Positions 1 to 41,791 of a DNA stretch of 64,000 bases are shown here, piece after piece. Position 1 is the first letter of the stretch. The number at the start of each line of letters is the position of its first letter. The translations under genes and the position numbers were made by a program. The stretch is from positions 1-64,000 of IMG/VR virus record IMGVR_UViG_3300024239_000011; one strand, 5' to 3'. The notes under the pieces were generated by a model. The model was not told the DNA's origin. It was given only the letters and a program-made list of their open reading frames with translations, and ran no database searches.

Positions 1-408
1 CATGGTGTCGGTGTGCGGGCGGTTCAGACGCTCGACCAGTACCCCTATGCGCTTAGCACGGTCATCGGTCATGAACGGAAGATGCCCTTCACGCATCATG
101 ACGCTCATGCGGGCATCTTCGTTCCATTCGAACCAACTCAGGTCGTAGGGCGGGAGCGAGGACGGGAGGGAGCGTAGAAGAAAACGGGGATCGGCTGCTG
201 CCAAATAGCTGGCGCGCTCGACCAAGGAATCATCAATCAGGAACCTGCGGGCACGCCGAAGGTTGTTCGCCACCGGATGGAACATCGTGTCTTGCTCTTT
301 CGAAGACACGTCGAGCGCGTTCGCCAACTTCTCATACGGCTCCATTTTATCGTGCTTGATGCACGCATATGAGAGCATGTCATGCAAAAGAGGGGTGTCG
401 CGTTCCAT
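1..408 (-). CDS. hypothetical protein, runs off the window edge
   Basis: Open frame from ATG at 408 (MERDTPLLHDML...), AGGA upstream and a TTGACT-N17-TACTAT promoter near 440-465. Confidence 0.7.
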   Translation of the reverse strand, partial: MERDTPLLHDMLSYACIKHDKMEPYEKLANALDVSSKEQDTMFHPVANNLRRARRFLIDDSLVERASYLAAADPRFLLRSLPSSLPPYDLSWFEWNEDARMSVMMREGHLPFMTDDRAKRIGVLVERLNRPHTDTM

Positions 409-472
409 CACAGCTATCCTGTTTCCTAACCCAGGATAGTAAACATTTTGCTATAGAAAGTCAAGTATCTGA

Positions 473-799: not shown

Positions 800-1915
800 T
801 TAGGCATCATTCTCATTGATGAACTTGGCGAACTCATCTTCCATATCACCGTTGATGAAGTCGTACATACACTCACCAAGGCGTTGCATTTTGGAAAGAC
901 TGGACTGTCGCATCATGTTGATGAATGCTGCGGCCAAATGGGAAACTTCGTTGTCAGTCAATCGGTTGGCACGGTTTTCCTTGATCTTGTCCAGCGCAGT
1001 CATGAATTCGTCGCTGGTGTTCTCGACAAGAATACCAATGCTTTCCTTGAGACGTTCAGTGCCTTCGATGACCGAACGACCACCCATTTCTTCCGGGGTC
1101 TGGTCAAAAAGCACGAGGAATTGATCGCGAATGTCTTGTTCAATCTGGCGAGCATCACGCCCTTCACCGTCAACCGCATTCACATAATCACGAACTGTAG
1201 TAAAGTCATTGGCGTCGATGTCGCTTTTGACTAATTCACACACTGCATTGATGTTTGTGTCGTATTCACTTTCAATAGGAGCTTCTTCATCCATGACCAT
1301 CGGGTTGTCAGCCATGTTGTTGGTGATTCGCAGAGCATTACGCCCCGACTCCGGACGACCTTTATAGTCATAGGCTTTGATATCAGACACCCGACTTTTA
1401 TAGTGGTTATGCCCATAATCGGCTTGAGCAGTTTCATTGACTTTTGTACCACCAGTGCTGGTGTCAAATTGAATATCAATCATATCGTCTGGTCCACATA
1501 CCTCAAATTCTACTGCACCCGTCCCAATCTGATGTTCCAACCAACCTTCGTTGGTCTGGGTATCGGCGTCACAACCGCAACCACAACCTGCCGAGCAACC
1601 ATTTGCACACGCACAAGAGTTGCCACCGGAGCAAGAAGACCCCGCGTCTACAATTTCCACTTCACCGTCTTGGATTTCTACCTCACCATCATTATTCACG
1701 GCAATTGCTGCCTGACGCATGGTCGGTTGATCGTCCATCTTCACGCCAGCCAATTCAAGCATACGGGACAGTTCATCCCAGTTCGTGGCGCTGACGGTTG
1801 TTGTGGTAGTGTAGTTCACAGTCGGAGTAAGTCCGGTGACTTCGGATTTTTGTGCAGTCTGATCAGTACCCGTGCGAGTAATCGTCAGATTAAGGGTGGT
1901 GCTGTCGGTCATCAC
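800..1915 (-). CDS. hypothetical late protein, possibly head/core associated; internal Cys-rich segment
   Basis: 371-aa ORF overlapping the upstream gene by 4 nt; in an operon downstream of a TAAATA box. Confidence 0.65.
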   Translation of the reverse strand: MMTDSTTLNLTITRTGTDQTAQKSEVTGLTPTVNYTTTTTVSATNWDELSRMLELAGVKMDDQPTMRQAAIAVNNDGEVEIQDGEVEIVDAGSSCSGGNSCACANGCSAGCGCGCDADTQTNEGWLEHQIGTGAVEFEVCGPDDMIDIQFDTSTGGTKVNETAQADYGHNHYKSRVSDIKAYDYKGRPESGRNALRITNNMADNPMVMDEEAPIESEYDTNINAVCELVKSDIDANDFTTVRDYVNAVDGEGRDARQIEQDIRDQFLVLFDQTPEEMGGRSVIEGTERLKESIGILVENTSDEFMTALDKIKENRANRLTDNEVSHLAAAFINMMRQSSLSKMQRLGECMYDFINGDMEDEFAKFINENDA

Positions 1916-2736
1916 TTCTTTCCTTTCTTCGCACGAATGCTACCGGTTGTTGCGGATACCTCTTTACGGTTTCCTTTATCGTCTTTAAAGATACCGGTGT
2001 AAGTTTTTTGGTCGTCATCAAAATTACCAGGATCGGCAATTCCGGCGTATGCATCAAAAGCATCACCCTCAAGACGTTCCCACCAAGGCACACTCTTCGG
2101 GGCACCTTCGATGTGCGTGTTGAAATCGTTTTCATCCGCGTTTTCGGGTTTTTTGTGATCGATGAAATTGAACAATTCCGGCGTATCCGGTTTGATTTGT
2201 TCGGGTTTGCGCGTTGCAGCTACTCGTGCTAGATAGTCAAGTAGCTGGCTATTGTGTTCATTACCAACGAAGGATGCTGCATCATCATTATTTTCTGATT
2301 TGTAGTAGCCGCTGGTGTTCAGTAAGCTTGAGCGGGACAATCCAGCTTTCTTAGCTTCCGCGTCAATGTCATGTAAGGCGTTTTGACGTTCAGCCTCTAC
2401 TTCCATTGGATCATTGTCAGTGCGTACCACTATTTGGTCTTCCGGTAGTTCAAGAACAGTACGTATTTCCTGCTGAAGGATATATGCGGATACTGGCAGA
2501 CCTGTGATAACATCCAAAATCCAAACTTCAGCGGCATCAAGCTTTTGAAAATCAAGTGGGTGACGTTGCATCATGGTTTTCTTTGGACGACCGATCTCAC
2601 GAAGGTCGTGCTTCATTAATAGGCGCTCAATCCGATCCAATCTCTCGTCATTGAGTTCGACTACCGTCTTAATGCGGTAATGGTATTCTCGGTCGGCGTT
2701 CGACACGTAATGCTTAAAAGATTTAATCTCTGGCAT
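1912..2736 (-). CDS. hypothetical late (probably virion-associated) protein
   Basis: 274-aa ORF; GAGGA RBS; ATAAATA at about 2765-2771 on the minus strand. Confidence 0.7.
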   Translation of the reverse strand: MPEIKSFKHYVSNADREYHYRIKTVVELNDERLDRIERLLMKHDLREIGRPKKTMMQRHPLDFQKLDAAEVWILDVITGLPVSAYILQQEIRTVLELPEDQIVVRTDNDPMEVEAERQNALHDIDAEAKKAGLSRSSLLNTSGYYKSENNDDAASFVGNEHNSQLLDYLARVAATRKPEQIKPDTPELFNFIDHKKPENADENDFNTHIEGAPKSVPWWERLEGDAFDAYAGIADPGNFDDDQKTYTGIFKDDKGNRKEVSATTGSIRAKKGKK

Positions 2737-2771
2737 GGTTATCCTCGATGCAGCATCTATCTGTGTATTTA

Positions 2772-3281
2772 TTACTTGTCCCTATTCATGAACTTTTCGA
2801 GTAATTCATTTCGGTCAGCAACCATTCCTCCTTCTCCGACAACAACTCCCTCTTGGGTATTACCCTTAAGCATATCAATGCGTTCTTGATCCTGTTTCAA
2901 TTTGATCAGGCGCATTCGTTTATCGATTTTGTCTTTACGAGCATTCATAGCAAGAGTAAGCATCTGAACGGCGCCCGCTACAAAAGCTTCAGCATTCTTG
3001 GGGTCTACATCGGTACTCAAGTCCATGAATGTCTTGTGGTGGGTGAATGCTTCGGTGGCAATTTCATCCATTTTTTGGTCATGCTCAGCAAGCATAAAGT
3101 CCTTAATTTCCAAACTAGTTAAATCTTTGGTACCTTTTATTGCTTTGGCGCATTCTTGTTTGGTTGCCGCTTCAATTTCAGCATCTACATCTTCAAAATC
3201 ATCTTCACCCTCAAGGTCAGCAAGAGCGTCACTTAGTTTGGGTAAGTTAAGCGTGTCTTCAATCCGGCTCATATATATCAC
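2772..3281 (-). CDS. putative terminase small subunit-like protein
   Basis: Helical 169-aa ORF ending GEGGMVADRNELLEKF, reminiscent of jumbo-phage TerS-like proteins; CTAAATA upstream; family call from memory. Confidence 0.4.
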   Translation of the reverse strand: MIYMSRIEDTLNLPKLSDALADLEGEDDFEDVDAEIEAATKQECAKAIKGTKDLTSLEIKDFMLAEHDQKMDEIATEAFTHHKTFMDLSTDVDPKNAEAFVAGAVQMLTLAMNARKDKIDKRMRLIKLKQDQERIDMLKGNTQEGVVVGEGGMVADRNELLEKFMNRDK

Positions 3282-29758: not shown

Positions 29759-30796
29759 ATGCGTAAACTCGTTACTATCCGTGAAGTATCGGAACTTCGT
29801 CCAATTCCGGATTCTGATTTTATTGAACTTGCTATCGTTGACGGATGGCAGGTAGTGGTCAAAAAGGGCGAATTCCAAGTTGGCGACCGTGGTCTATACC
29901 ACGAGATCGACAGCTTTGTTCCAGCATCAGATGAACGCTATGCGTTCCTGTCCAAGGATTTCCGCGAGTACGAAGGAAATCAGGGTGCCCGTCTGCGCAG
30001 CATGCGGTTCCGTGGACAGCTTTCTCAGGGTCTTATGCTGCCGATTTCGTCGTTCCCTGAAGTCGCTGATAAAGCGAACGGTGAGGATGTTACCGAAATC
30101 GTCGGTGTGATCAAATGGGAACCGGCAATGCCTGCCGAAATGAAGGGTGAAGCACGTGGTTTATTCCCGTCGTACATTCCGAAAACAGACGCCGAGCGAG
30201 TTCAGAACATCCCGGATGTATTGGAAATGAACAAGGGTCATCGGTTCGAGGCGTCCATTAAGCTTGATGGCACGTCTTGCACCATGTTCTATGGTGGTCC
30301 GGATCACGACAAGCACTTCGGTATTTGCTCGCGCAATTATGAACTGCGTGAGTCGGACACCCATACTATGTGGGTGCTGGCGCGCAAGTACCGGTTGCAC
30401 GAAATCCTTTCGGAGTTTGGCGAGTTCGCTATCCAGGGCGAAGTAATTGGCGAAGGGATTCAGGGCAACGTGGAGAAATTGAAGGGGCAGGATTTCTTCG
30501 TTTTCAATATCTACGACATCAAAGCAGGGCGTTATATGTCCCCGGTGGATCGTATGGCGGTGATCGACAAGATCAACGAACTATATGGGGTTGGTCTGAA
30601 AAGTGTCCCGGTGCTTGAACAGTCGATTGCTCTAGACGAGAAGTTCACGACTATTCAGGACATCCTTGACTATGCAGATGGTCCGTCCCTCAACCCCCAA
30701 GCTAAGCGTGAGGGTGTGGTGTTCAAGAGACTGGATGGTGGTGCTAGTTTTAAGAGCATATCAAACGCATTTCTACTAAAACACGGTGATCGGTAA
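29759..30796 (+). CDS. ATP-dependent RNA ligase, DRB0094/Rnl2-like family
   Basis: N-terminal OB-like RKLVTI..ELAIVDGWQVVVKKGEF; motif I SIKLDGTS; QGEVIG, FFVFNIYD, REGVVFK, SFKSIS. Confidence 0.88.
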   Translation: MRKLVTIREVSELRPIPDSDFIELAIVDGWQVVVKKGEFQVGDRGLYHEIDSFVPASDERYAFLSKDFREYEGNQGARLRSMRFRGQLSQGLMLPISSFPEVADKANGEDVTEIVGVIKWEPAMPAEMKGEARGLFPSYIPKTDAERVQNIPDVLEMNKGHRFEASIKLDGTSCTMFYGGPDHDKHFGICSRNYELRESDTHTMWVLARKYRLHEILSEFGEFAIQGEVIGEGIQGNVEKLKGQDFFVFNIYDIKAGRYMSPVDRMAVIDKINELYGVGLKSVPVLEQSIALDEKFTTIQDILDYADGPSLNPQAKREGVVFKRLDGGASFKSISNAFLLKHGDR

Positions 30797-33496: not shown

Positions 33497-33679
33497 ATGA
33501 AGTTCGACGTATTTAAGATCGTGGTAGTGTTTGGAATCATTGCGGTCGGCATCGTCATGTTACAGGGATGGCGCGGTAATGTCTATGATCGTTGCATGGC
33601 GGACAACCGCAACGCAGTGCAGTGCGAAATTTACGCCAAAGCCCGCACCGGAATGAGTCGTCCGATGTGGGATGACTAA
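33497..33679 (+). CDS. small membrane-anchored protein
   Basis: GGAGGG RBS, N-terminal TM; followed by terminator 33682-33712. Confidence 0.6.
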   Translation: MKFDVFKIVVVFGIIAVGIVMLQGWRGNVYDRCMADNRNAVQCEIYAKARTGMSRPMWDD

Positions 33680-33709
33680 GGAAAAGCCCGGTCATTGACC
33701 GGGCTTTTT

Positions 33710-34636
33710 TTACTTCGTTTTGTCGATGAATTCACCGTTGTGATCGCGGGCAAAATTATCAGCACCAATGTATAAAGCATGTTGTGCCGCCCACGCAGCA
33801 TCGCGCTCTGGGTGATCCTGCCACGTGATCTTCACGGGATAGAAACCGTTTTTTCCGGCGACGGCATCGCGCCAAACTTCCGCGAATGTGCCTGCGGTCG
33901 TATTGGGATTGCTCATCAGGATGCAATGCCCACCCGTAGACAGGGTTGGGATAATTGACATCCAGAAATCACGCATGGTTTTGTGGCTGACATAAGCAGC
34001 AGAATCAATCACCAAAAGATTGATCGTCATTCCACGCCCAGCATGCTCTTGGACTGCTCTGGTTATAATGCGCGACCCATTGGCAAATTCAATACGCTCT
34101 GAGGTGTAATATTTCACTCCGTCACGAAGATAATCGGGACATGTCTCATAAAAGTATTTGAGAATTTGAACCAGTGCTTTGGCGTGCGTCAGATTGGCGC
34201 TACAAAGCATGATGGTTTGGTTGGCATTGAACATTGCTTTCCATAGTACATACAACATTGTTGTTGTCGATATACCCATTTGACGTGAATGGTTGACTAC
34301 CACCATGCGATGTTCAGCGTATGCCTGTAAAAGATTTTTCTGAAAATCATACAGACTGAAAGGTATTGACCCCTTCACTGGATGTTGAACGAAATTTTTC
34401 TCTGCAAAAATGATCGGTGTGGTCATACACGCTGACAGTTCTTTCAACTGTTCTTCGGTGTATTTGGTCGGGGTAAACGCGGGTTTGATCAATGGTGGTG
34501 TTAACGGTTCGGGGACTGCTTGGACATAACCGGCGATCCGGTCGGCCAACGTGAACAGTTCTTCCATCTTGGCATCATTGCCCAAGCGACGCTCTGCCAT
34601 CAACAGAGCGTTGAAGCGAATATCAGTAATATGCAT
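33710..34636 (-). CDS. terminase large subunit ATPase-domain paralog (gp17-like), catalytically degenerate, no nuclease domain
   Basis: HPVKGSIPFSLYDFQ, SRQMGISTT (Walker A K to I), IEFANGSRI, GRGMTINLLVIDSA (Walker B E to S), PTLSTGG. Confidence 0.8.
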   Translation of the reverse strand: MHITDIRFNALLMAERRLGNDAKMEELFTLADRIAGYVQAVPEPLTPPLIKPAFTPTKYTEEQLKELSACMTTPIIFAEKNFVQHPVKGSIPFSLYDFQKNLLQAYAEHRMVVVNHSRQMGISTTTMLYVLWKAMFNANQTIMLCSANLTHAKALVQILKYFYETCPDYLRDGVKYYTSERIEFANGSRIITRAVQEHAGRGMTINLLVIDSAAYVSHKTMRDFWMSIIPTLSTGGHCILMSNPNTTAGTFAEVWRDAVAGKNGFYPVKITWQDHPERDAAWAAQHALYIGADNFARDHNGEFIDKTK

Positions 34637-34722
34637 GTTCTTTCCTCATCGTGTTACGCCGTATTTCAGGCGCCCGAAGCGTATTTCGGCTTTCGGGGAT
34701 GAGGATATTTAGCAGGACAAAA

Positions 34723-35571
34723 TTACCACCCTGTGATGATCTTGCGATACTGGCGCCAGTTGGATTGTACCCATTTGACCACTTCGGTGATTTCTTCTGA
34801 ACAGAACACACCGGCATGGCTGTCATGGGAATTCTCACGCCGTTTCAAGGGATGCGGCTTCACGCACCATGCTTCATCGGTGTACAATTCATCAGTTTGC
34901 ACTCGCCCGCGCTCGACCACAATGATGGATCGCGGATCAACGTCTTCACCCCAGAACACGACCTGATCTTCTTCGTCGCCGTAGTGGGTGCATTCGACAC
35001 CACTGTTCTGGAAGATCACAAGCTCATTGCCATACTTCCCTTTACTAGCAACCCAATCGACATACTTGGAGTTGGCAGTAAATGCGAAGTTATAACCGCC
35101 ATAGTTCTTCTCTGTTTCATGCACCCATTTGGTTAGACCCAAGCGATCCATGTCATCCATACCTTTGGTAAAACCACTCTTGCCGATGTTGTGAGCATCA
35201 TAGGTAAAATGAACAAGCCATGTATGTCGTGGAAGAAGCGTCTTGTGATTGAGGTCCATATGTGCCCAGGTCGGCGCAGACGCAGGGTCATTTTGCATTA
35301 CTTCGGCGGCAATCGTTTCGCGGAAATCTTCGTAAAACTCTTCTTGCATTTCCTTAGGGAGTTTGAAGAAAACCTCAGGTTCAAGATCATTCACGTCACC
35401 GGATGAGTCAATTTGAGTATCTTCAATTTGAGATAATGCTTGGAGAACTTCGGGATGGTGTTCTGCCCACAGCGAAAATTCCCACCAACGCTGGTAAATG
35501 TCGATCTCTTGATTACGAATATGACGGAGTAACGCCAAATTATTTCTGGAATAAATTTCCCTGATTTTCAT
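34723..35571 (-). CDS. leader-bearing hypothetical protein (MKIREIY)
   Basis: Start moved to 35571; ATAAATA at 35594-35600; LVHFT...GFTKG resembles an ART first strand. Confidence 0.65.
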   Translation of the reverse strand: MKIREIYSRNNLALLRHIRNQEIDIYQRWWEFSLWAEHHPEVLQALSQIEDTQIDSSGDVNDLEPEVFFKLPKEMQEEFYEDFRETIAAEVMQNDPASAPTWAHMDLNHKTLLPRHTWLVHFTYDAHNIGKSGFTKGMDDMDRLGLTKWVHETEKNYGGYNFAFTANSKYVDWVASKGKYGNELVIFQNSGVECTHYGDEEDQVVFWGEDVDPRSIIVVERGRVQTDELYTDEAWCVKPHPLKRRENSHDSHAGVFCSEEITEVVKWVQSNWRQYRKIITGW

Positions 35572-35638: not shown

Positions 35639-36190
35639 ATGTTGGTTCGAGAATGGAGACATGCCATGGGCGCCGGTAAGTATTCCCCCACTATCAGTGC
35701 TGCGTATCATGCCGATCAAGATTGGTGGCATAAGAATGGCGGCGGTACGGTCGATGTCTGCTACGACAGCGACGGCTATGACTCCTACGGCTACAACAAG
35801 GATAATGTTGATCGCGCCGGTCACGAAGAAGACGATTACGACCGTGACGCCGATCTCGTCTTTGATATTGAAACCGAGTGGTCGTTCAACAAGGAAACCG
35901 GCAAGCCGTGTCTGCGCTTCGAGCGCATTCGCGTGACCAACGAAGACATGGTTGCGCTGTTTGGGCTGAAGGCGATGGACCGGCATATGGTTGTCACTAT
36001 CGACCCCAAGATCGAGCGTCTTGCGCGGGGTGGTTTGATCATCACCGAGTCCATGAAGGGGCAGGGCACCTGTGTCCAGTGGACTGACGCGCATGTGTCG
36101 GTCAAGATCACCCCTGAAGGGGAAACCAAGGTTGCGGAATGGCTCAAGGGCACGTTCCATGTCAAGACCATCACGCATGGAAAGGTGTGA
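35639..36190 (+). CDS. hypothetical protein with YDxxGY repeats
   Basis: YDSDGYDSYGYN; true start probably the ATG after GGAGA. Confidence 0.65.
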   Translation: MLVREWRHAMGAGKYSPTISAAYHADQDWWHKNGGGTVDVCYDSDGYDSYGYNKDNVDRAGHEEDDYDRDADLVFDIETEWSFNKETGKPCLRFERIRVTNEDMVALFGLKAMDRHMVVTIDPKIERLARGGLIITESMKGQGTCVQWTDAHVSVKITPEGETKVAEWLKGTFHVKTITHGKV

Positions 36191-40184: not shown

Positions 40185-40808
40185 TTACAGTTTCCACCCT
40201 TCAAGTCCGCCCCCAAGCGGTTTGTCCAGATTGCCGCCGATAGCTGCCCGGTGGAACACCAGATCATCGTAGTCTTCCTGATCCGTCGAGGTGTTGGGCT
40301 TGAGCGGTTTGTTCGAACGCGGATGATCCACCTCGAATTCATGCGCCGGGTGTGGTGGGGCGTCGTGATCGATGTCGCCAATTGCGTATTCTTCCGCTTC
40401 GTTGCTGTCGGTATGGGTCGGTCCATAATTCATCCGTGATATGAAAGCGTTGTAGACCTGTTCCGCTTTGTGGATGTTGAAATAGCGAATGTCACGCACC
40501 GGGACGATCCGATAATTCTGACGCAATTTGGTATAGTTCAGTCCGATGCGGAATGGTTTCTGACCGGCGACTGCATAGGTCTTCAGAAGATCAAGGGACC
40601 GATCACGAGTGAGGCTGACGCCGGAAACTTCCTTGCCATCGACCAACTGATAACGCCCTTCTTCGTCCCGCTTCAACGTCCCATGAACGACATGGGTGGA
40701 TGCGCCACATTTGATACGGTTGGTCTTGAGCATGCGGCGCAAATGATCCCCTGAGGTGAAGTGGTAGATCAGTTGATCCGGGGCATTGATGATCTCGTCT
40801 ATTCTCAT
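40185..40808 (-). CDS. leader-bearing ART-like protein
   Basis: MRIDEIINA; LIYHFTS...MLKTNRI...GVSLTRD...NEAEEY. Confidence 0.55.
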   Translation of the reverse strand: MRIDEIINAPDQLIYHFTSGDHLRRMLKTNRIKCGASTHVVHGTLKRDEEGRYQLVDGKEVSGVSLTRDRSLDLLKTYAVAGQKPFRIGLNYTKLRQNYRIVPVRDIRYFNIHKAEQVYNAFISRMNYGPTHTDSNEAEEYAIGDIDHDAPPHPAHEFEVDHPRSNKPLKPNTSTDQEDYDDLVFHRAAIGGNLDKPLGGGLEGWKL

Positions 40809-41791
40809 TTCGTCCCCTCGCTGATCCGTGGGTCTTCGCGGTTGTACGTACCGGTGTTGCTCAATGCTGATTTGACTTGGTGGGGATCGAAAACCGCCAA
40901 CGTCAACGGCGCCCCTGGATGTTCACGGGTCCAGAACCCATCGAATTTGTTCCGGCGCATCCATGCCCGCACCGCAGGTTTTTCAAGGATACCGAAGTCA
41001 CCGCCCTTGAGATATCCCACTGCGGTTTTTGGTCCGTACAAGGCGCCAGGAAAAATCGCCTGGAAGTTCTTCTCAAGGAATGCTGCAAGCCTGTCTAGAT
41101 GCTCTTGGTTCTGGTAGTCGAACGGGTTCTCCATCCGCACGTAGCACGGCAGGACATGCCCGCCGCGTGCGAAGTAGGATGCCGTATCCGGGGAGGTCGC
41201 AAAGAAAATCGCGTTACCGCCGGTTCCCCGATTGCCTGGGAGCTTGAACTGATCAAAGGCGGGCTTGGAAGTCCCGTGGTACATCACCGCCGGGTTGCCG
41301 TCTTCATCCACGACTTTGCTGTTTCCGAACCATGCCCAGAACGCCGAATCTGGTTCAGGGAGGCGGGCTTCGAGGATGCTCTCAAACTTGCGTTTGTGGC
41401 GGTAGCTCCAAAATGCGGCGCCATCCGCTTCGAGGTTGCTGGACGAATCAATGGTGTAGCCGATGCGCTCAAGGTGGTCGTACAGCGCCGTTGCGATCCC
41501 ACGACGACGGAAGCTCGGCTTGGTTTCAATGCGGTGGAATTCGCCACTGTCATTTTCATCCGGATAGAACTTACCTTTGGCAACCTCTACCGCGTCGATG
41601 AAGGCACGGACGACCACCATAGTGGCGTCTTCATCTTCATCCGAGGGCTGACGTTGTGCAGTAACGTTCAGCACCGTTCCATCTGCCAATTTGTATTCAG
41701 CAGAGTTACGCGCAAAGCCCCCAACTACATCACCAAGTCTGGTATAGTGGCGATCTTGAAAACGCGCTCCGGTAATCTCAATAATTCTCAT
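40805..41791 (-). CDS. leader-bearing GNAT + ART-PolyVal-like fusion
   Basis: FRRRGIATALYD...GAAFW (GNAT); FWAWFGNSKVVDEDGNPAVMYHGT...AIFFATSPDTASYFA...CYVRMENPF...FDG...AVFDPHQVKS (ART). Confidence 0.75.
   Translation of the reverse strand: MRIIEITGARFQDRHYTRLGDVVGGFARNSAEYKLADGTVLNVTAQRQPSDEDEDATMVVVRAFIDAVEVAKGKFYPDENDSGEFHRIETKPSFRRRGIATALYDHLERIGYTIDSSSNLEADGAAFWSYRHKRKFESILEARLPEPDSAFWAWFGNSKVVDEDGNPAVMYHGTSKPAFDQFKLPGNRGTGGNAIFFATSPDTASYFARGGHVLPCYVRMENPFDYQNQEHLDRLAAFLEKNFQAIFPGALYGPKTAVGYLKGGDFGILEKPAVRAWMRRNKFDGFWTREHPGAPLTLAVFDPHQVKSALSNTGTYNREDPRISEGTK

What the first reader, a model, noticed from the sequence alone, without database searches (positions are those of the whole stretch)
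33710..34636. ATPase-dead, nuclease-less terminase paralog
Seen: a clear gp17-like ATPase domain, but Walker A SRQxGKT becomes SRQMGIS, Walker B DE becomes DS, the coupling motif STPNG becomes SNPNT, and the protein ends before the nuclease domain. The frame is intact over 308 aa, so it appears maintained. Inference: a pseudo-enzyme acting as a packaging regulator, or a decoy for terminase-sensing defences (Avs-type NLR-like sensors recognise TerL ATPase domains).
Basis: partly seen in the sequence, partly recalled or inferred. Interest (0 to 1): 0.6.

Follow-up and report, generated by a model that had tools for sequence, protein, structure and literature searches.

The report
Inactive nuclease-less terminase paralog family
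This gene of a roughly 870-kb phage is an intact extra copy of the DNA-packaging motor's ATPase half that has lost its catalytic residues and its nuclease half, and it belongs to a widespread family of such copies that I found no published description of, so these giant phages probably carry an unstudied non-enzymatic packaging factor.

Summary
Window 33710-34636(-) encodes a 308-aa protein with a T4 gp17-type ATPase fold. It has Ile for the Walker A Lys, Ser for the Walker B Glu and Asn in the coupling motif. It stops at the ATPase/nuclease boundary, directly before a strong terminator.

It is a paralog, but the real TerL is not in the 543-kb record. The record is a fragment of a roughly 870-kb genome. 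The real TerL lies 5.8 kb beyond window position 1, at the conserved syntenic place. It has canonical motifs and is split by an intein-like element and endonuclease-like genes.

The protein is not a one-off. Of the 150 best profile matches, 90 are short and 64 of those lack both catalytic residues. They share a conserved variant P-loop, a D-[NDQS]-A-A-[YF] motif and an N-terminal helical extension that TerLs lack. Members occur in the cultured phages Phosso and Atu_ph07, in Phosso and uncultured relatives beside the head genes. In the Phosso subfamily dN/dS is about 0.1.

Most likely it is a non-catalytic packaging or head-assembly factor. That role is inferred. The Avs-decoy idea has no support. 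Expression is untested.

The parts
33710..34636 (-). CDS of the 308-aa TerL-ATPase-like protein (P0001). ATG at 34636, TAA at 33712-33710.
34496..34636 (-). N-terminal extension, residues 1-47. The model shows two helices (3-18 and 24-39). Full-length TerLs lack it; it is the hallmark of the short family (L11, A14, L27, A31, R33, I34, Y37 fit the family consensus).
34265..34291 (-). Variant P-loop H116-S-R-Q-M-G-I122-S-T124. There is no Lys at the classical position or at position -7. Arg118, Gln119, Gly121 and Ser123 are kept.
34031..34039 (-). G200-R201-G202. The arginine 10 residues before the Walker B Asp is kept. From memory, this position is the trans-acting arginine finger of P74-26 TerL (R139).
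   Evidence: the R139 equivalence is recalled, not tested
33998..34018 (-). Walker B region L-L-V-I-D211-S212-A. The Asp is kept and the catalytic Glu is replaced by Ser. It fits the family motif D-[NDQS]-A-A-[YF].
33902..33916 (-). Coupling (C) motif region M-S-N243-P-N. TerLs have T-S-T-P-N here.
34640..34646 (-). Shine-Dalgarno-like AGGAAAG, 3 nt upstream of the ATG.
   Evidence: read directly from the sequence
33679..33711 (.). Hairpin of 15 pairs flanked by T/A runs. It acts as a bidirectional intrinsic terminator and begins within the stop codon. No nuclease-domain remnant follows it.

Best explanation
The gene encodes a pseudo-ATPase. It is a folded, nuclease-less paralog of the large terminase ATPase domain that cannot hydrolyse ATP by the canonical mechanism. 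It has no P-loop Lys at either known position, no catalytic Glu, and an altered coupling motif.

It is one member of a large, old family of such short TerL-like proteins in huge T4-related phages. The family is marked by an added N-terminal helical hairpin, a conserved variant P-loop (N-x-A-R-Q-M-G-x-[ST]) and a D-[NDQS]-A-A-[YF] motif in place of Walker B D-E.

The phage's working terminase is a separate gene about 40 kb away. It has canonical motifs and is made in two halves, presumably joined by an atypical split intein.

Shown: homology, fold, loss of catalytic residues, the separate true TerL, family membership, and purifying selection in a subfamily.

Inferred: the protein works without catalysis as an accessory of head assembly or DNA packaging. 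It would bind TerL, the portal or DNA through the retained ATPase-domain surfaces (Q motif, P-loop Arg, arginine-finger position) and the new N-terminal hairpin. It could act as an adaptor or regulator of the motor, possibly in a small-terminase-like role.
For: Fold and homology.

Catalytic losses measured against 111 close TerLs: 68 of 115 positions that are at least 93% conserved are kept, but K122I, E212S and T243N are lost.

Natural control: of the 18 full-length TerLs without the classical Lys, 17 have Lys at -7 and 16 of those also keep the Walker B Glu. The short proteins have H, S, T or A at -7.

No second TerL and no nuclease domain in the 543-kb record.

True TerL on the adjoining contig: Walker A GRQLGKT, Walker B LDEF, C-motif TSTPN, 55% identical to Phosso TerL, at the syntenic place.

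Family: of the 150 best profile hits, 90 are short and 64 of those lack both Lys and Glu. The motifs and the N-terminal extension are conserved. In the core-only mixture-model tree, all 18 full-length TerLs sit on one side of a 99/97 branch, with P0001 and the 24 short proteins on the other. In the 127-row quick tree P0001 is sister to dead member P0129 (97).

Maintenance: Shine-Dalgarno site and terminator. dN/dS is about 0.10 in the Phosso subfamily, like its neighbours.

Packaging link: in Phosso, L156-L158 and L160 the gene sits just after the prohead protease, a 470-aa gene and the gp23 MCP gene.

Other paralogs: ATPase-only TerL paralogs also sit directly upstream of TerL in L077, L115, L116 and L140. 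Cultured phages Phosso and Atu_ph07 (gp627) carry members alongside a normal TerL.
Against: - No functional data exist for any member.
- In this phage the gene is not in the head module. It lies among small unknown genes.
- No RNA or protein evidence was found.
- dN/dS could not be measured for this gene, because all other copies found are the same strain.
- The one complex prediction (with the true TerL ATPase half) gave no answer.
- A dead subunit that joined the motor ring should poison it, so simple co-assembly is not obviously beneficial.
- Iyer et al. 2021 (PMC7824862) state that group 2 jumbo phages have a classical small terminase. That weakens the small-terminase-substitute idea, although PF11053 found none here or in three relatives (that search has limited sensitivity).
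- Some short database entries may be gene fragments or halves of split TerLs.
Confidence: 0.55

Rival explanations
1. Defence decoy. The protein mimics the TerL ATPase domain so as to bind TerL-sensing Avs-type STAND sensors without activating them, or to titrate them.
For: Avs1-3 sense TerL by direct binding (PMC13581612). KpAvs2 is predicted to contact the TerL ATPase domain (PMC11564622). The TerL fold is well preserved in the model.
Against: - Paper searches for 'Avs, terminase, decoy' found no TerL decoy.
- The family is ancient, and in Phosso and uncultured relatives it is syntenic with head genes rather than with anti-defence loci.
- The conserved variant P-loop and D-N-A-A-Y motifs are not explained by mimicry.
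- Binding to a sensor would be expected to trigger it.
- The host and its defences are unknown.
Confidence: 0.08
2. Still an enzyme. A non-canonical ATPase or nucleotide-binding switch that uses His116 at position -7, Arg118 and Ser212 or other residues in place of Lys and Glu.
For: Deviant Walker A motifs with the Lys moved to -7 do work in full-length TerLs. His is the commonest residue at -7 in the short family (27%). Arg (96%), Gln, Gly, Ser/Thr, the Q motif (100%) and the Walker B Asp (80%) are conserved.
Against: - Position -7 is variable in the family (H, S, T, A and others).
- The catalytic Glu is replaced by Asn, Asp, Gln or Ser. These are the kinds of change used to trap ATPases (background knowledge).
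- From memory, the T4 gp17 K166 and E256 mutants are dead.
Confidence: 0.12
3. Weapon against rival phages. A dominant-negative TerL look-alike that docks on the portals or motors of co-infecting relatives and stalls their packaging, while the phage's own motor is immune.
For: From background knowledge, one dead subunit can stall ring ATPase packaging motors. The protein keeps the ATPase-domain surfaces and the arginine-finger position.
Against: No evidence of specificity. Conserved placement next to the phage's own head genes in relatives suggests a role in the phage's own assembly.
Confidence: 0.07
4. Relic without function. A leftover of a duplicated or horizontally acquired TerL fragment that is decaying.
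For: The catalytic residues and the nuclease domain are lost. The branch is about twice as long as that of the phage's own TerL. It lies among unknown small genes. No expression data exist.
Against: - The frame is open over 308 codons at about 60% divergence, with no frameshift.
- The model is confident (pLDDT 90.9).
- It has a Shine-Dalgarno site and a terminator immediately after the stop.
- The family is wide, keeps its length, ends and variant motifs, and the Phosso subfamily evolves at dN/dS of about 0.1.
Confidence: 0.05
5. Assembly artefact. The two TerL-like genes come from two different phages joined in one contig.
For: terL is used as a single-copy marker for such misassemblies (bioRxiv 10.1101/2025.02.27.640493). 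The JGI assembly breaks between the two genes.
Against: - The two JGI contigs overlap by 18 bp inside one continuous 410-aa ORF, and an independent ENA assembly spans the join at 100% identity.
- The true TerL lies where synteny with Phosso, PA5oct and Atu_ph07 puts it, next to the structural genes at window 1912-3281.
- The 543-kb part has the capsid gene but no other terminase.
- Phosso and Atu_ph07, both isolated phages, also carry both genes.
Confidence: 0.03

Closest known systems
T4 gp17 large terminase, N-terminal ATPase domain (PDB 2O0H/2O0J/3CPE; Pfam PF03237 Terminase_6N)
   Same: Same fold (TM 0.78, rmsd 1.9 A, 27% identity). It keeps the Q motif, P-loop Arg-Gln-x-Gly-x-Ser/Thr, Walker B Asp, and the STGG and HPxR motifs.
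   Different: No Walker A Lys, no catalytic Glu, an altered C motif and no RNase H-like nuclease domain. It has an extra N-terminal helical hairpin.
The short TerL-like proteins of Sinorhizobium phage Phosso (gene 344, annotated 'terminase small subunit') and Agrobacterium phage Atu_ph07 (gp627, 'hypothetical protein'), with their metagenomic relatives P0121-P0274
   Same: Same architecture, the same C-terminal end a few residues after the conserved 'EF', the same N-terminal extension, the same loss of Lys and Glu, and the same lack of the 13-aa loop of jumbo-phage TerLs.
   Different: Only 22-37% identical. This member is the most TerL-like: 40-44% identity to real TerLs, with the GRG arginine kept. 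It does not sit beside the capsid gene.
Deviant Walker A terminases (lambda gpA-type KSARVGYS, recalled from Mitchell and Rao 2004; full-length 'LKARQLGIST' TerLs of loci L078-L093)
   Same: The P-loop reads ...RQ[LM]GIST, with Ile where Lys normally stands. The Walker B surroundings are similar (LLVID-AA-).
   Different: Those proteins carry Lys at position -7, nearly all keep the catalytic Glu, and all have the nuclease domain. This one has His at -7 and Ser for Glu.
Non-catalytic paralogous subunits of ring ATPases (for example clamp-loader delta-prime and F1 alpha). This is an analogy from general knowledge.
   Same: A paralog of the catalytic subunit that keeps the fold and the arginine-finger position but not hydrolysis.
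   Different: No evidence yet that this protein enters the terminase ring. The prediction with the TerL ATPase half gave no answer.
Fractured genes with atypical split inteins in phage TerL (Dassa et al. 2009; AceL-TerL and GOS-TerL inteins; all recalled). This concerns the phage's true TerL, not the finding.
   Same: The true TerL halves end and begin with a short (about 29 aa) and a long (111 aa...SHN|C) intein-like piece, with free-standing endonuclease-like genes between them.
   Different: The finding itself has no intein residues. It runs 7 residues past the intein insertion point, so it is not a leftover N-half of such a gene.

Membership tests
Large terminase (TerL), T4 gp17 type | Sequence match to the ATPase-domain model (Pfam PF03237) above its cut-off | tested here: met
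   27.1 bits against a cut-off of 22. PHROG TerL families at E 1e-27 to 1e-48.
Large terminase (TerL), T4 gp17 type | ASCE ATPase fold of gp17 subdomains I/II | tested here: met
   AF2 model pLDDT 90.9. Foldseek match to 2O0J with TM 0.78 and rmsd 1.9 A.
Large terminase (TerL), T4 gp17 type | P-loop lysine (classical G-K-[ST], or the deviant Lys at -7) | tested here: not met
   I122 at the classical position and H116 at -7.
Large terminase (TerL), T4 gp17 type | Catalytic glutamate after the Walker B aspartate | tested here: not met
   D211-S212.
Large terminase (TerL), T4 gp17 type | C-terminal RNase H-like nuclease domain | tested here: not met
   The protein ends at the domain boundary with a terminator directly after the stop. 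No nuclease homology anywhere in the 543-kb record.
Short nuclease-less TerL-like family (Phosso gene 344, Atu_ph07 gp627, P0126-P0273) | Length of about 245-320 aa, ending a few residues after the conserved 'EF' at the ATPase/nuclease boundary | tested here: met
   308 aa, ending EFIDKTK*. Family members end CEFKDAQI*, ECKFVSKR* and similar.
Short nuclease-less TerL-like family (Phosso gene 344, Atu_ph07 gp627, P0126-P0273) | N-terminal helical extension with the conserved pattern L..A..L........L...A.[KR]I..Y | tested here: met
   Column occupancy is 0.68 in the family against 0.03 in TerLs, and P0001 fits the pattern. BLASTP alignments to P0137, P0130 and P0129 start at residues 1-6. An HMM of the Phosso subfamily alone against shuffles gives p of about 0.002.
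Short nuclease-less TerL-like family (Phosso gene 344, Atu_ph07 gp627, P0126-P0273) | Variant motifs: R-Q-M-G-x-[ST] without Lys, and D-[NDQS]-A-A-[YF] without Glu | tested here: met
   SRQMGIST and IDSAAY.
Short nuclease-less TerL-like family (Phosso gene 344, Atu_ph07 gp627, P0126-P0273) | Groups with the family rather than with full-length TerLs in a tree | tested here: met
   Core-only careful tree: the 18 full-length TerLs are split from P0001 plus 24 short proteins at 99/97. Quick tree of 127 rows: 95 for the same split, and P0001 sister to P0129 at 97. With few family members sampled the place was unresolved. The root is unknown, so a clade is not proven.
Short nuclease-less TerL-like family (Phosso gene 344, Atu_ph07 gp627, P0126-P0273) | Gene just downstream of the prohead protease, scaffold-position and MCP genes | tested here: not met
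   Here the MCP gene is at 205997-207292 of the record and this gene is at 33.7 kb. The genome is rearranged relative to Phosso.
Small terminase (TerS) | Homology to a TerS family, or a gene adjacent to TerL | tested here: not met
   No TerS family hit. The gene lies about 40 kb from the true TerL. Phosso's 'terminase small subunit' label on its homologue has no support in these scans.
Small terminase (TerS) | Oligomeric ring that binds packaging-site DNA and stimulates TerL | not testable with these tools
   Needs biochemistry.
Anti-Avs decoy | Binds and blocks a TerL-sensing STAND sensor | not testable with these tools
   Host unknown. The searched papers describe no such family.

The most novel reading that the evidence does not exclude
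Huge T4-related phages build their packaging machine from two kinds of TerL-fold proteins. One is the catalytic TerL. The other is this non-catalytic short paralog, which is an obligatory partner: a nucleotide-sensing or DNA-recognising adaptor that takes over the small-terminase or regulatory role, or sits in a hetero-oligomeric motor. Under this reading the family is a core head or packaging gene of these phages that has been mislabelled as 'TerL', 'fragment', 'TerS' or 'hypothetical'.
Probability: 0.25. Interest if true: 0.8.

Novelty: new variant of a known kind. Interest (0 to 1): 0.62.

Why it matters
TerL is treated as the universal, single-copy hallmark enzyme of tailed phages. It is used as a phylogenetic marker, as a check for misassembly, and as the target that bacterial Avs sensors recognise.

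A conserved family of TerL-fold proteins that have given up catalysis and the nuclease domain would matter in three ways:
- It would add a new component to the packaging or head-assembly pathway of the largest known phages.
- It would be a rare example of a viral pseudo-ATPase.
- It would warn against counting terL hits as genome copies.

The family is directly testable, because the isolated phages Phosso and Atu_ph07 carry members.

As a by-product, the window turns out to belong to a phage genome of about 870 kb. That is larger than the 841 kb quoted as the current maximum. Its working terminase is made from a fractured, intein-split gene.

Tried and rejected
- Joining the two ends of the 543-kb record gave a continuous 259-codon frame and suggested a circular genome. 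This was wrong. Another assembly shows the cut gene is 410 aa and continues into a second contig. A junction pattern found nothing in viral contigs.
- Searches of the record for a second terminase all found only this ORF. These used PF03237, PF17289, PF20441, phrog_2, phrog_36964, phrog_5989, phmmer, tblastn and an HMM of 111 TerLs.
- P-loop ORFs elsewhere in the record are PrkA, TelA, SbcC, Dda and similar, not terminases.
- dN/dS for the gene itself could not be measured. Eight other contigs carry it with zero differences.
- Expression could not be assessed. No RNA run holds the gene. One run labelled RNA-Seq (probably DNA) has only short pieces outside it.
- Complex prediction of the protein with the true TerL ATPase half gave no answer (score 0.01). 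This is not evidence either way.
- The first small tree left the protein unresolved. AU tests rejected neither a clade with the Phosso subfamily (p 0.46) nor one with the deviant-P-loop TerLs (p 0.31). Richer sampling resolved this.
- PF11053 (gp16 small terminase) was not detected in this record, PA5oct, Phosso or Atu_ph07. The first-look filter is insensitive, so this is not proof of absence.
- phrog_5989 is not the dead family. The true TerL half scores higher on it.
- The idea that the protein is a leftover N-half of a fractured TerL was rejected. It has no intein residues and runs 7 residues past the intein site.
- Paper searches for inactive or second terminases found no description of such a family.
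Full report
**1. The observation**

Window 33710-34636 on the minus strand is an open frame of 308 codons. The product matches Pfam Terminase_6N at 27.1 bits (cut-off 22) and several PHROG 'terminase large subunit' families at E 1e-27 to 1e-48.

An AlphaFold2 model built on 61 homologues is confident (pLDDT 90.9, pTM 0.81). Its best PDB matches are the T4 gp17 ATPase domain structures (2O0J/2O0H/3CPE: TM 0.78, rmsd 1.9-2.1 A, 27% identity).

The HMMER alignment to gp17, read with gp17 residue numbers from memory, and alignments to close relatives give these correspondences:
- gp17 S-R-Q-L-G-K166-T becomes S-R-Q-M-G-I122-S.
- I-D255-E256 becomes I-D211-S212.
- T-T-T-P-N (T-S-T-P-N in jumbo-phage TerLs) becomes M-S-N243-P-N.
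- The protein ends at E-F-I-D-K-T-K, where full-length relatives run on (E-F-I-S-F-E-E-T-L-I-N...) into the linker and nuclease domain.

The gene also looks like a finished unit. AGGAAAG lies 3 nt before the ATG. A 15-pair hairpin flanked by T/A runs begins within the stop codon.

**2. Is it a paralog, and where is the real terminase?**

The window is the first 64 kb of a 543,035-bp virus record. No other TerL ATPase and no terminase nuclease domain could be found in that record. I tried family searches, phmmer and tblastn with the TerLs of the relatives PA5oct, Phosso and Atu_ph07, and an HMM of 111 full-length homologues run without filters.

In those relatives TerL follows a set of structural genes. 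The homologues of those genes lie at window 1912-3281(-), right at the record's start. A look-up of a neighbouring gene then showed that the record is a fragment:
- An ENA contig of 869,618 bp carries the same DNA and continues past window position 1.
- A second JGI contig of the same sample (326,607 bp) overlaps the record's start by 18 bp, inside one continuous 410-aa gene.

The true TerL begins 5,834 bp beyond position 1, on the same strand as the finding. Its N half is 303 aa, with GRQLGKT, LYLDEF and TSTPN, and is 55% identical to Phosso TerL. That half stops after ...FLREHC plus about 29 further residues.

Two DUF7487 endonuclease-like genes follow. Then comes a 370-aa ORF whose first 111 residues end in ...VLSHN|C. 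It has a weak Intein_splicing hit. The rest of the ORF is the nuclease domain, 47% identical to Phosso TerL.

This is the arrangement known as a fractured gene with an atypical split intein (recalled from the literature, not tested here). Hence the finding is indeed an extra copy. It is only 39.6% identical to its own phage's TerL, about 40 kb away from it.

**3. Are the substitutions really inactivating?**

A scan of viral contigs turned up full-length (528-532 aa) TerLs whose P-loop reads L-K-A-R-Q-L-G-I-S-T, with an intact Walker B (L-L-V-I-D-E-A).

Among the 60 long proteins in the profile search, 18 lack the classical Lys. Of these, 17 have Lys at position -7, and 16 of those 17 also keep the Walker B Glu. 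This is the deviant Walker A known from lambda gpA (recalled). So Ile at the Lys position is not in itself lethal.

The finding has His at -7 and Ser for the catalytic Glu, so it has neither solution.

Measured against 111 close TerLs, it keeps 68 of 115 positions that are at least 93% conserved. The kept positions include the Q motif, P-loop Arg, Gln and Gly, the G-R-G arginine ten residues before the Walker B Asp, the Asp itself, S-T-G-G and H-P-x-R. From memory, that arginine corresponds to the trans-acting finger R139 of P74-26 TerL.

The losses are therefore concentrated on catalysis while the scaffold is preserved. That is the pattern of a pseudo-enzyme rather than of decay.

**4. It belongs to a family**

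Phosso, an isolated 469-kb Sinorhizobium phage whose capsid protein is 81.5% identical to this phage's, has a normal TerL and also a 281-aa gene annotated 'terminase small subunit'. That gene has G-R-S-M-G-I-T and A-D-N, and ends four residues after the same 'EF'. It has four to five metagenomic relatives of 281-284 aa.

A profile of these plus the finding was searched against 1.84 billion representative proteins. It gave 9,008 hits at E up to 0.001 and 284 at E up to 1e-30. Of the best 150:
- 90 are at most 330 aa.
- 64 of those lack both the Lys and the Glu, 10 lack one, and 16 are intact. Some of the intact ones may be halves of split TerLs.

The dead short proteins share a conserved signature:
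- P-loop N-[HST]-A-R(96%)-Q(90%)-M(83%)-G(100%)-x-[TS].
- D(80%)-[N 50%, D 21%, Q 14%]-A-A-[YF]-I in place of Walker B D-E.
- Q motif at 100%.
- An N-terminal extension, occupied at 0.68 against 0.03 in TerLs, with the pattern L..A..L........L...A.[KR]I..Y.

The finding fits this pattern (L11, A14, L27, A31, R33, I34, Y37). In the model the extension forms two helices.

Tree evidence:
- BLASTP alignments of the finding to members P0137, P0130 and P0129 start at residues 1-6. Alignments to TerLs start at residues 48-50.
- In a 127-row quick tree the finding is sister to dead member P0129 (97). It lies on the short-family side of a 95 branch that holds all full-length TerLs on the other side.
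- A careful mixture-model tree of the ATPase core alone, with the extension columns removed, separates all 18 full-length TerLs from the finding plus 24 short proteins at 99/97. Its exact place inside the short group is unresolved.
- Earlier trees with few family members were inconclusive.

Atu_ph07 gp627 (244 aa, 'hypothetical') is a very divergent member. It has I-T-G-R-Q-V-G-S-S-T and ends R-E-Y-C-E-F. PA5oct has none.

Independent ATPase-only paralogs also exist:
- Proteins of 275-279 aa with intact motifs lie immediately upstream of TerL in four loci.
- A dead one (L150) trees with the deviant-P-loop TerLs.

**5. Is it maintained?**

For the gene itself no variant could be found. Eight other contigs from several samples are 99.8-100% identical and have no difference in the gene.

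For the Phosso subfamily, Phosso against L158 gives dN 0.276 and dS 2.65, a ratio of about 0.10. Phosso against L156 gives dN 0.123 with saturated dS. Neighbouring genes give 0.07-0.14. Because dS is saturated, the ratio is only approximate, but it is far below 1.

Together with the conserved length, ends and variant motifs across dozens of 50%-identity clusters, this argues for long-term purifying selection on a protein-level function.

Expression could not be checked. No RNA run holds the gene.

**6. What it probably does**

In Phosso, three related contigs and L160, the family gene sits two or three small genes after the cluster of prohead protease (S77), a 470-aa gene and the gp23 capsid gene. 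That links it to head assembly and packaging. In the present phage it has moved and lies among unknown small genes.

The retained features are nucleotide-pocket residues other than the two catalytic ones, the arginine-finger position, and a new helical hairpin. These fit a non-catalytic partner that binds TerL, the portal or DNA, and perhaps nucleotide.

I therefore favour an accessory or regulatory role in packaging. A small-terminase-like role is possible:
- For it: PF11053 found no gp16-type TerS in this record or in three relatives.
- Against it: that search is insensitive, and Iyer et al. 2021 (PMC7824862) state that group 2 jumbo phages do have a classical TerS.

A complex prediction with the TerL ATPase half gave no answer.

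The Avs-decoy idea remains possible in principle, because Avs sensors bind TerL and KpAvs2 is predicted to bind its ATPase domain. Nothing here supports it, however, and the conserved variant motifs and head-gene synteny are not what mimicry predicts.

**7. Novelty**

Paper searches found no description of catalytically inactive or nuclease-less TerL paralogs. A paper on the Sinorhizobium jumbo phage AP-J-162 merely lists 'three terminases' (PMC11242549). Databases label members as TerL, 'Fragment', TerS or hypothetical.

I rate it as a new variant of a known kind: a pseudo-enzyme branch of the TerL ATPase.

**Limits**

All functional statements are inferred. The root of the trees is unknown. 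Some short database proteins may be fragments. Intein and deviant-Walker-A comparisons rest partly on recalled literature.

Noticed in passing
window 1-450 and beyond (L071/L073; JGI contig Ga0247724_1000002): The 543,035-bp record is a fragment. It abuts a 326,607-bp contig of the same sample with an 18-bp overlap inside a 410-aa gene, and an ENA contig of 869,618 bp spans both. The phage genome is therefore about 870 kb, above the 841 kb quoted as the largest so far (bioRxiv 10.1101/2025.02.27.640493).
   Followed up: partly
L073 9016-14019 (outside the window, 5.8-10.8 kb beyond position 1): The true TerL is a fractured gene. It has a 303-aa ATPase half ending in a roughly 29-aa intein-like piece, then two DUF7487 endonuclease-like genes (337 and 589 aa), then a 370-aa ORF with a 111-aa intein-like piece (...VLSHN|C) followed by the nuclease domain. 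The arrangement is the same in four assemblies.
   Followed up: partly
loci L078-L088, L093 (viral contigs); P0189-P0271: Full-length TerLs have the deviant P-loop L-K-A-R-Q-L-G-[ILM]-S-T. The classical Lys is replaced by a hydrophobic residue, there is a Lys at -7, and Walker B D-E is almost always intact. They form a well-supported clade (99/96).
   Followed up: partly
L077 2170-2994, L115 301-1125, L116 2926-3750, L140 2926-3762: ATPase-only TerL paralogs of 275-279 aa have intact Walker A, Walker B and C motifs and end at Y-E-C-E-I. They lie immediately upstream of the full or split TerL, at the position a small terminase usually holds. They appear to be an independent duplication.
   Followed up: partly
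L150 2977-3825: This is another short dead paralog (R-H-S-R-Q-M-G-I-S-T, I-D-G-G). It trees with the deviant-P-loop TerLs and has a 60-aa tail with a weak CopG/ribbon-helix-helix hit (E 0.0014, below the cut-off).
   Followed up: no
window 35662-35992: Two alleles differing at 27 of 331 bases coexist in two of the DNA runs. This is a strain-variable patch just upstream of the neighbouring 282-aa gene.
   Followed up: no
window 34786-34941: A wastewater run holds a 159-bp piece that is 83% identical to the upstream 282-aa gene, with many differences spaced three bases apart. This indicates a more distant relative of the phage and purifying selection on that unknown gene.
   Followed up: no
record 454753-456729(-), 73870-75339(-), 541460-542761(-): The record carries three further notable genes. 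One is a PrkA/YeaG-type kinase gene, 59-62% identical to genes of three published 634-642-kb phages. One is a TelA-like gene. One encodes a 434-aa protein with repeated zinc-finger-like modules and an HNH-like end.
   Followed up: partly
Phosso 245307-251906 versus L156: The capsid gene has dS 0.09, but the short TerL-like gene and its neighbours have dS above 1.8. This marks a sharp mosaic (recombination) boundary between the capsid gene and the short paralog.
   Followed up: no
window 29759-30796(+), 40805-41791(-): Precomputed Pfam hits on identical contigs show an RNA ligase (PF09414) gene and an ART-PolyVal ADP-ribosyltransferase-like gene near the finding. A Bax1-I family gene is also nearby.
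   Followed up: no
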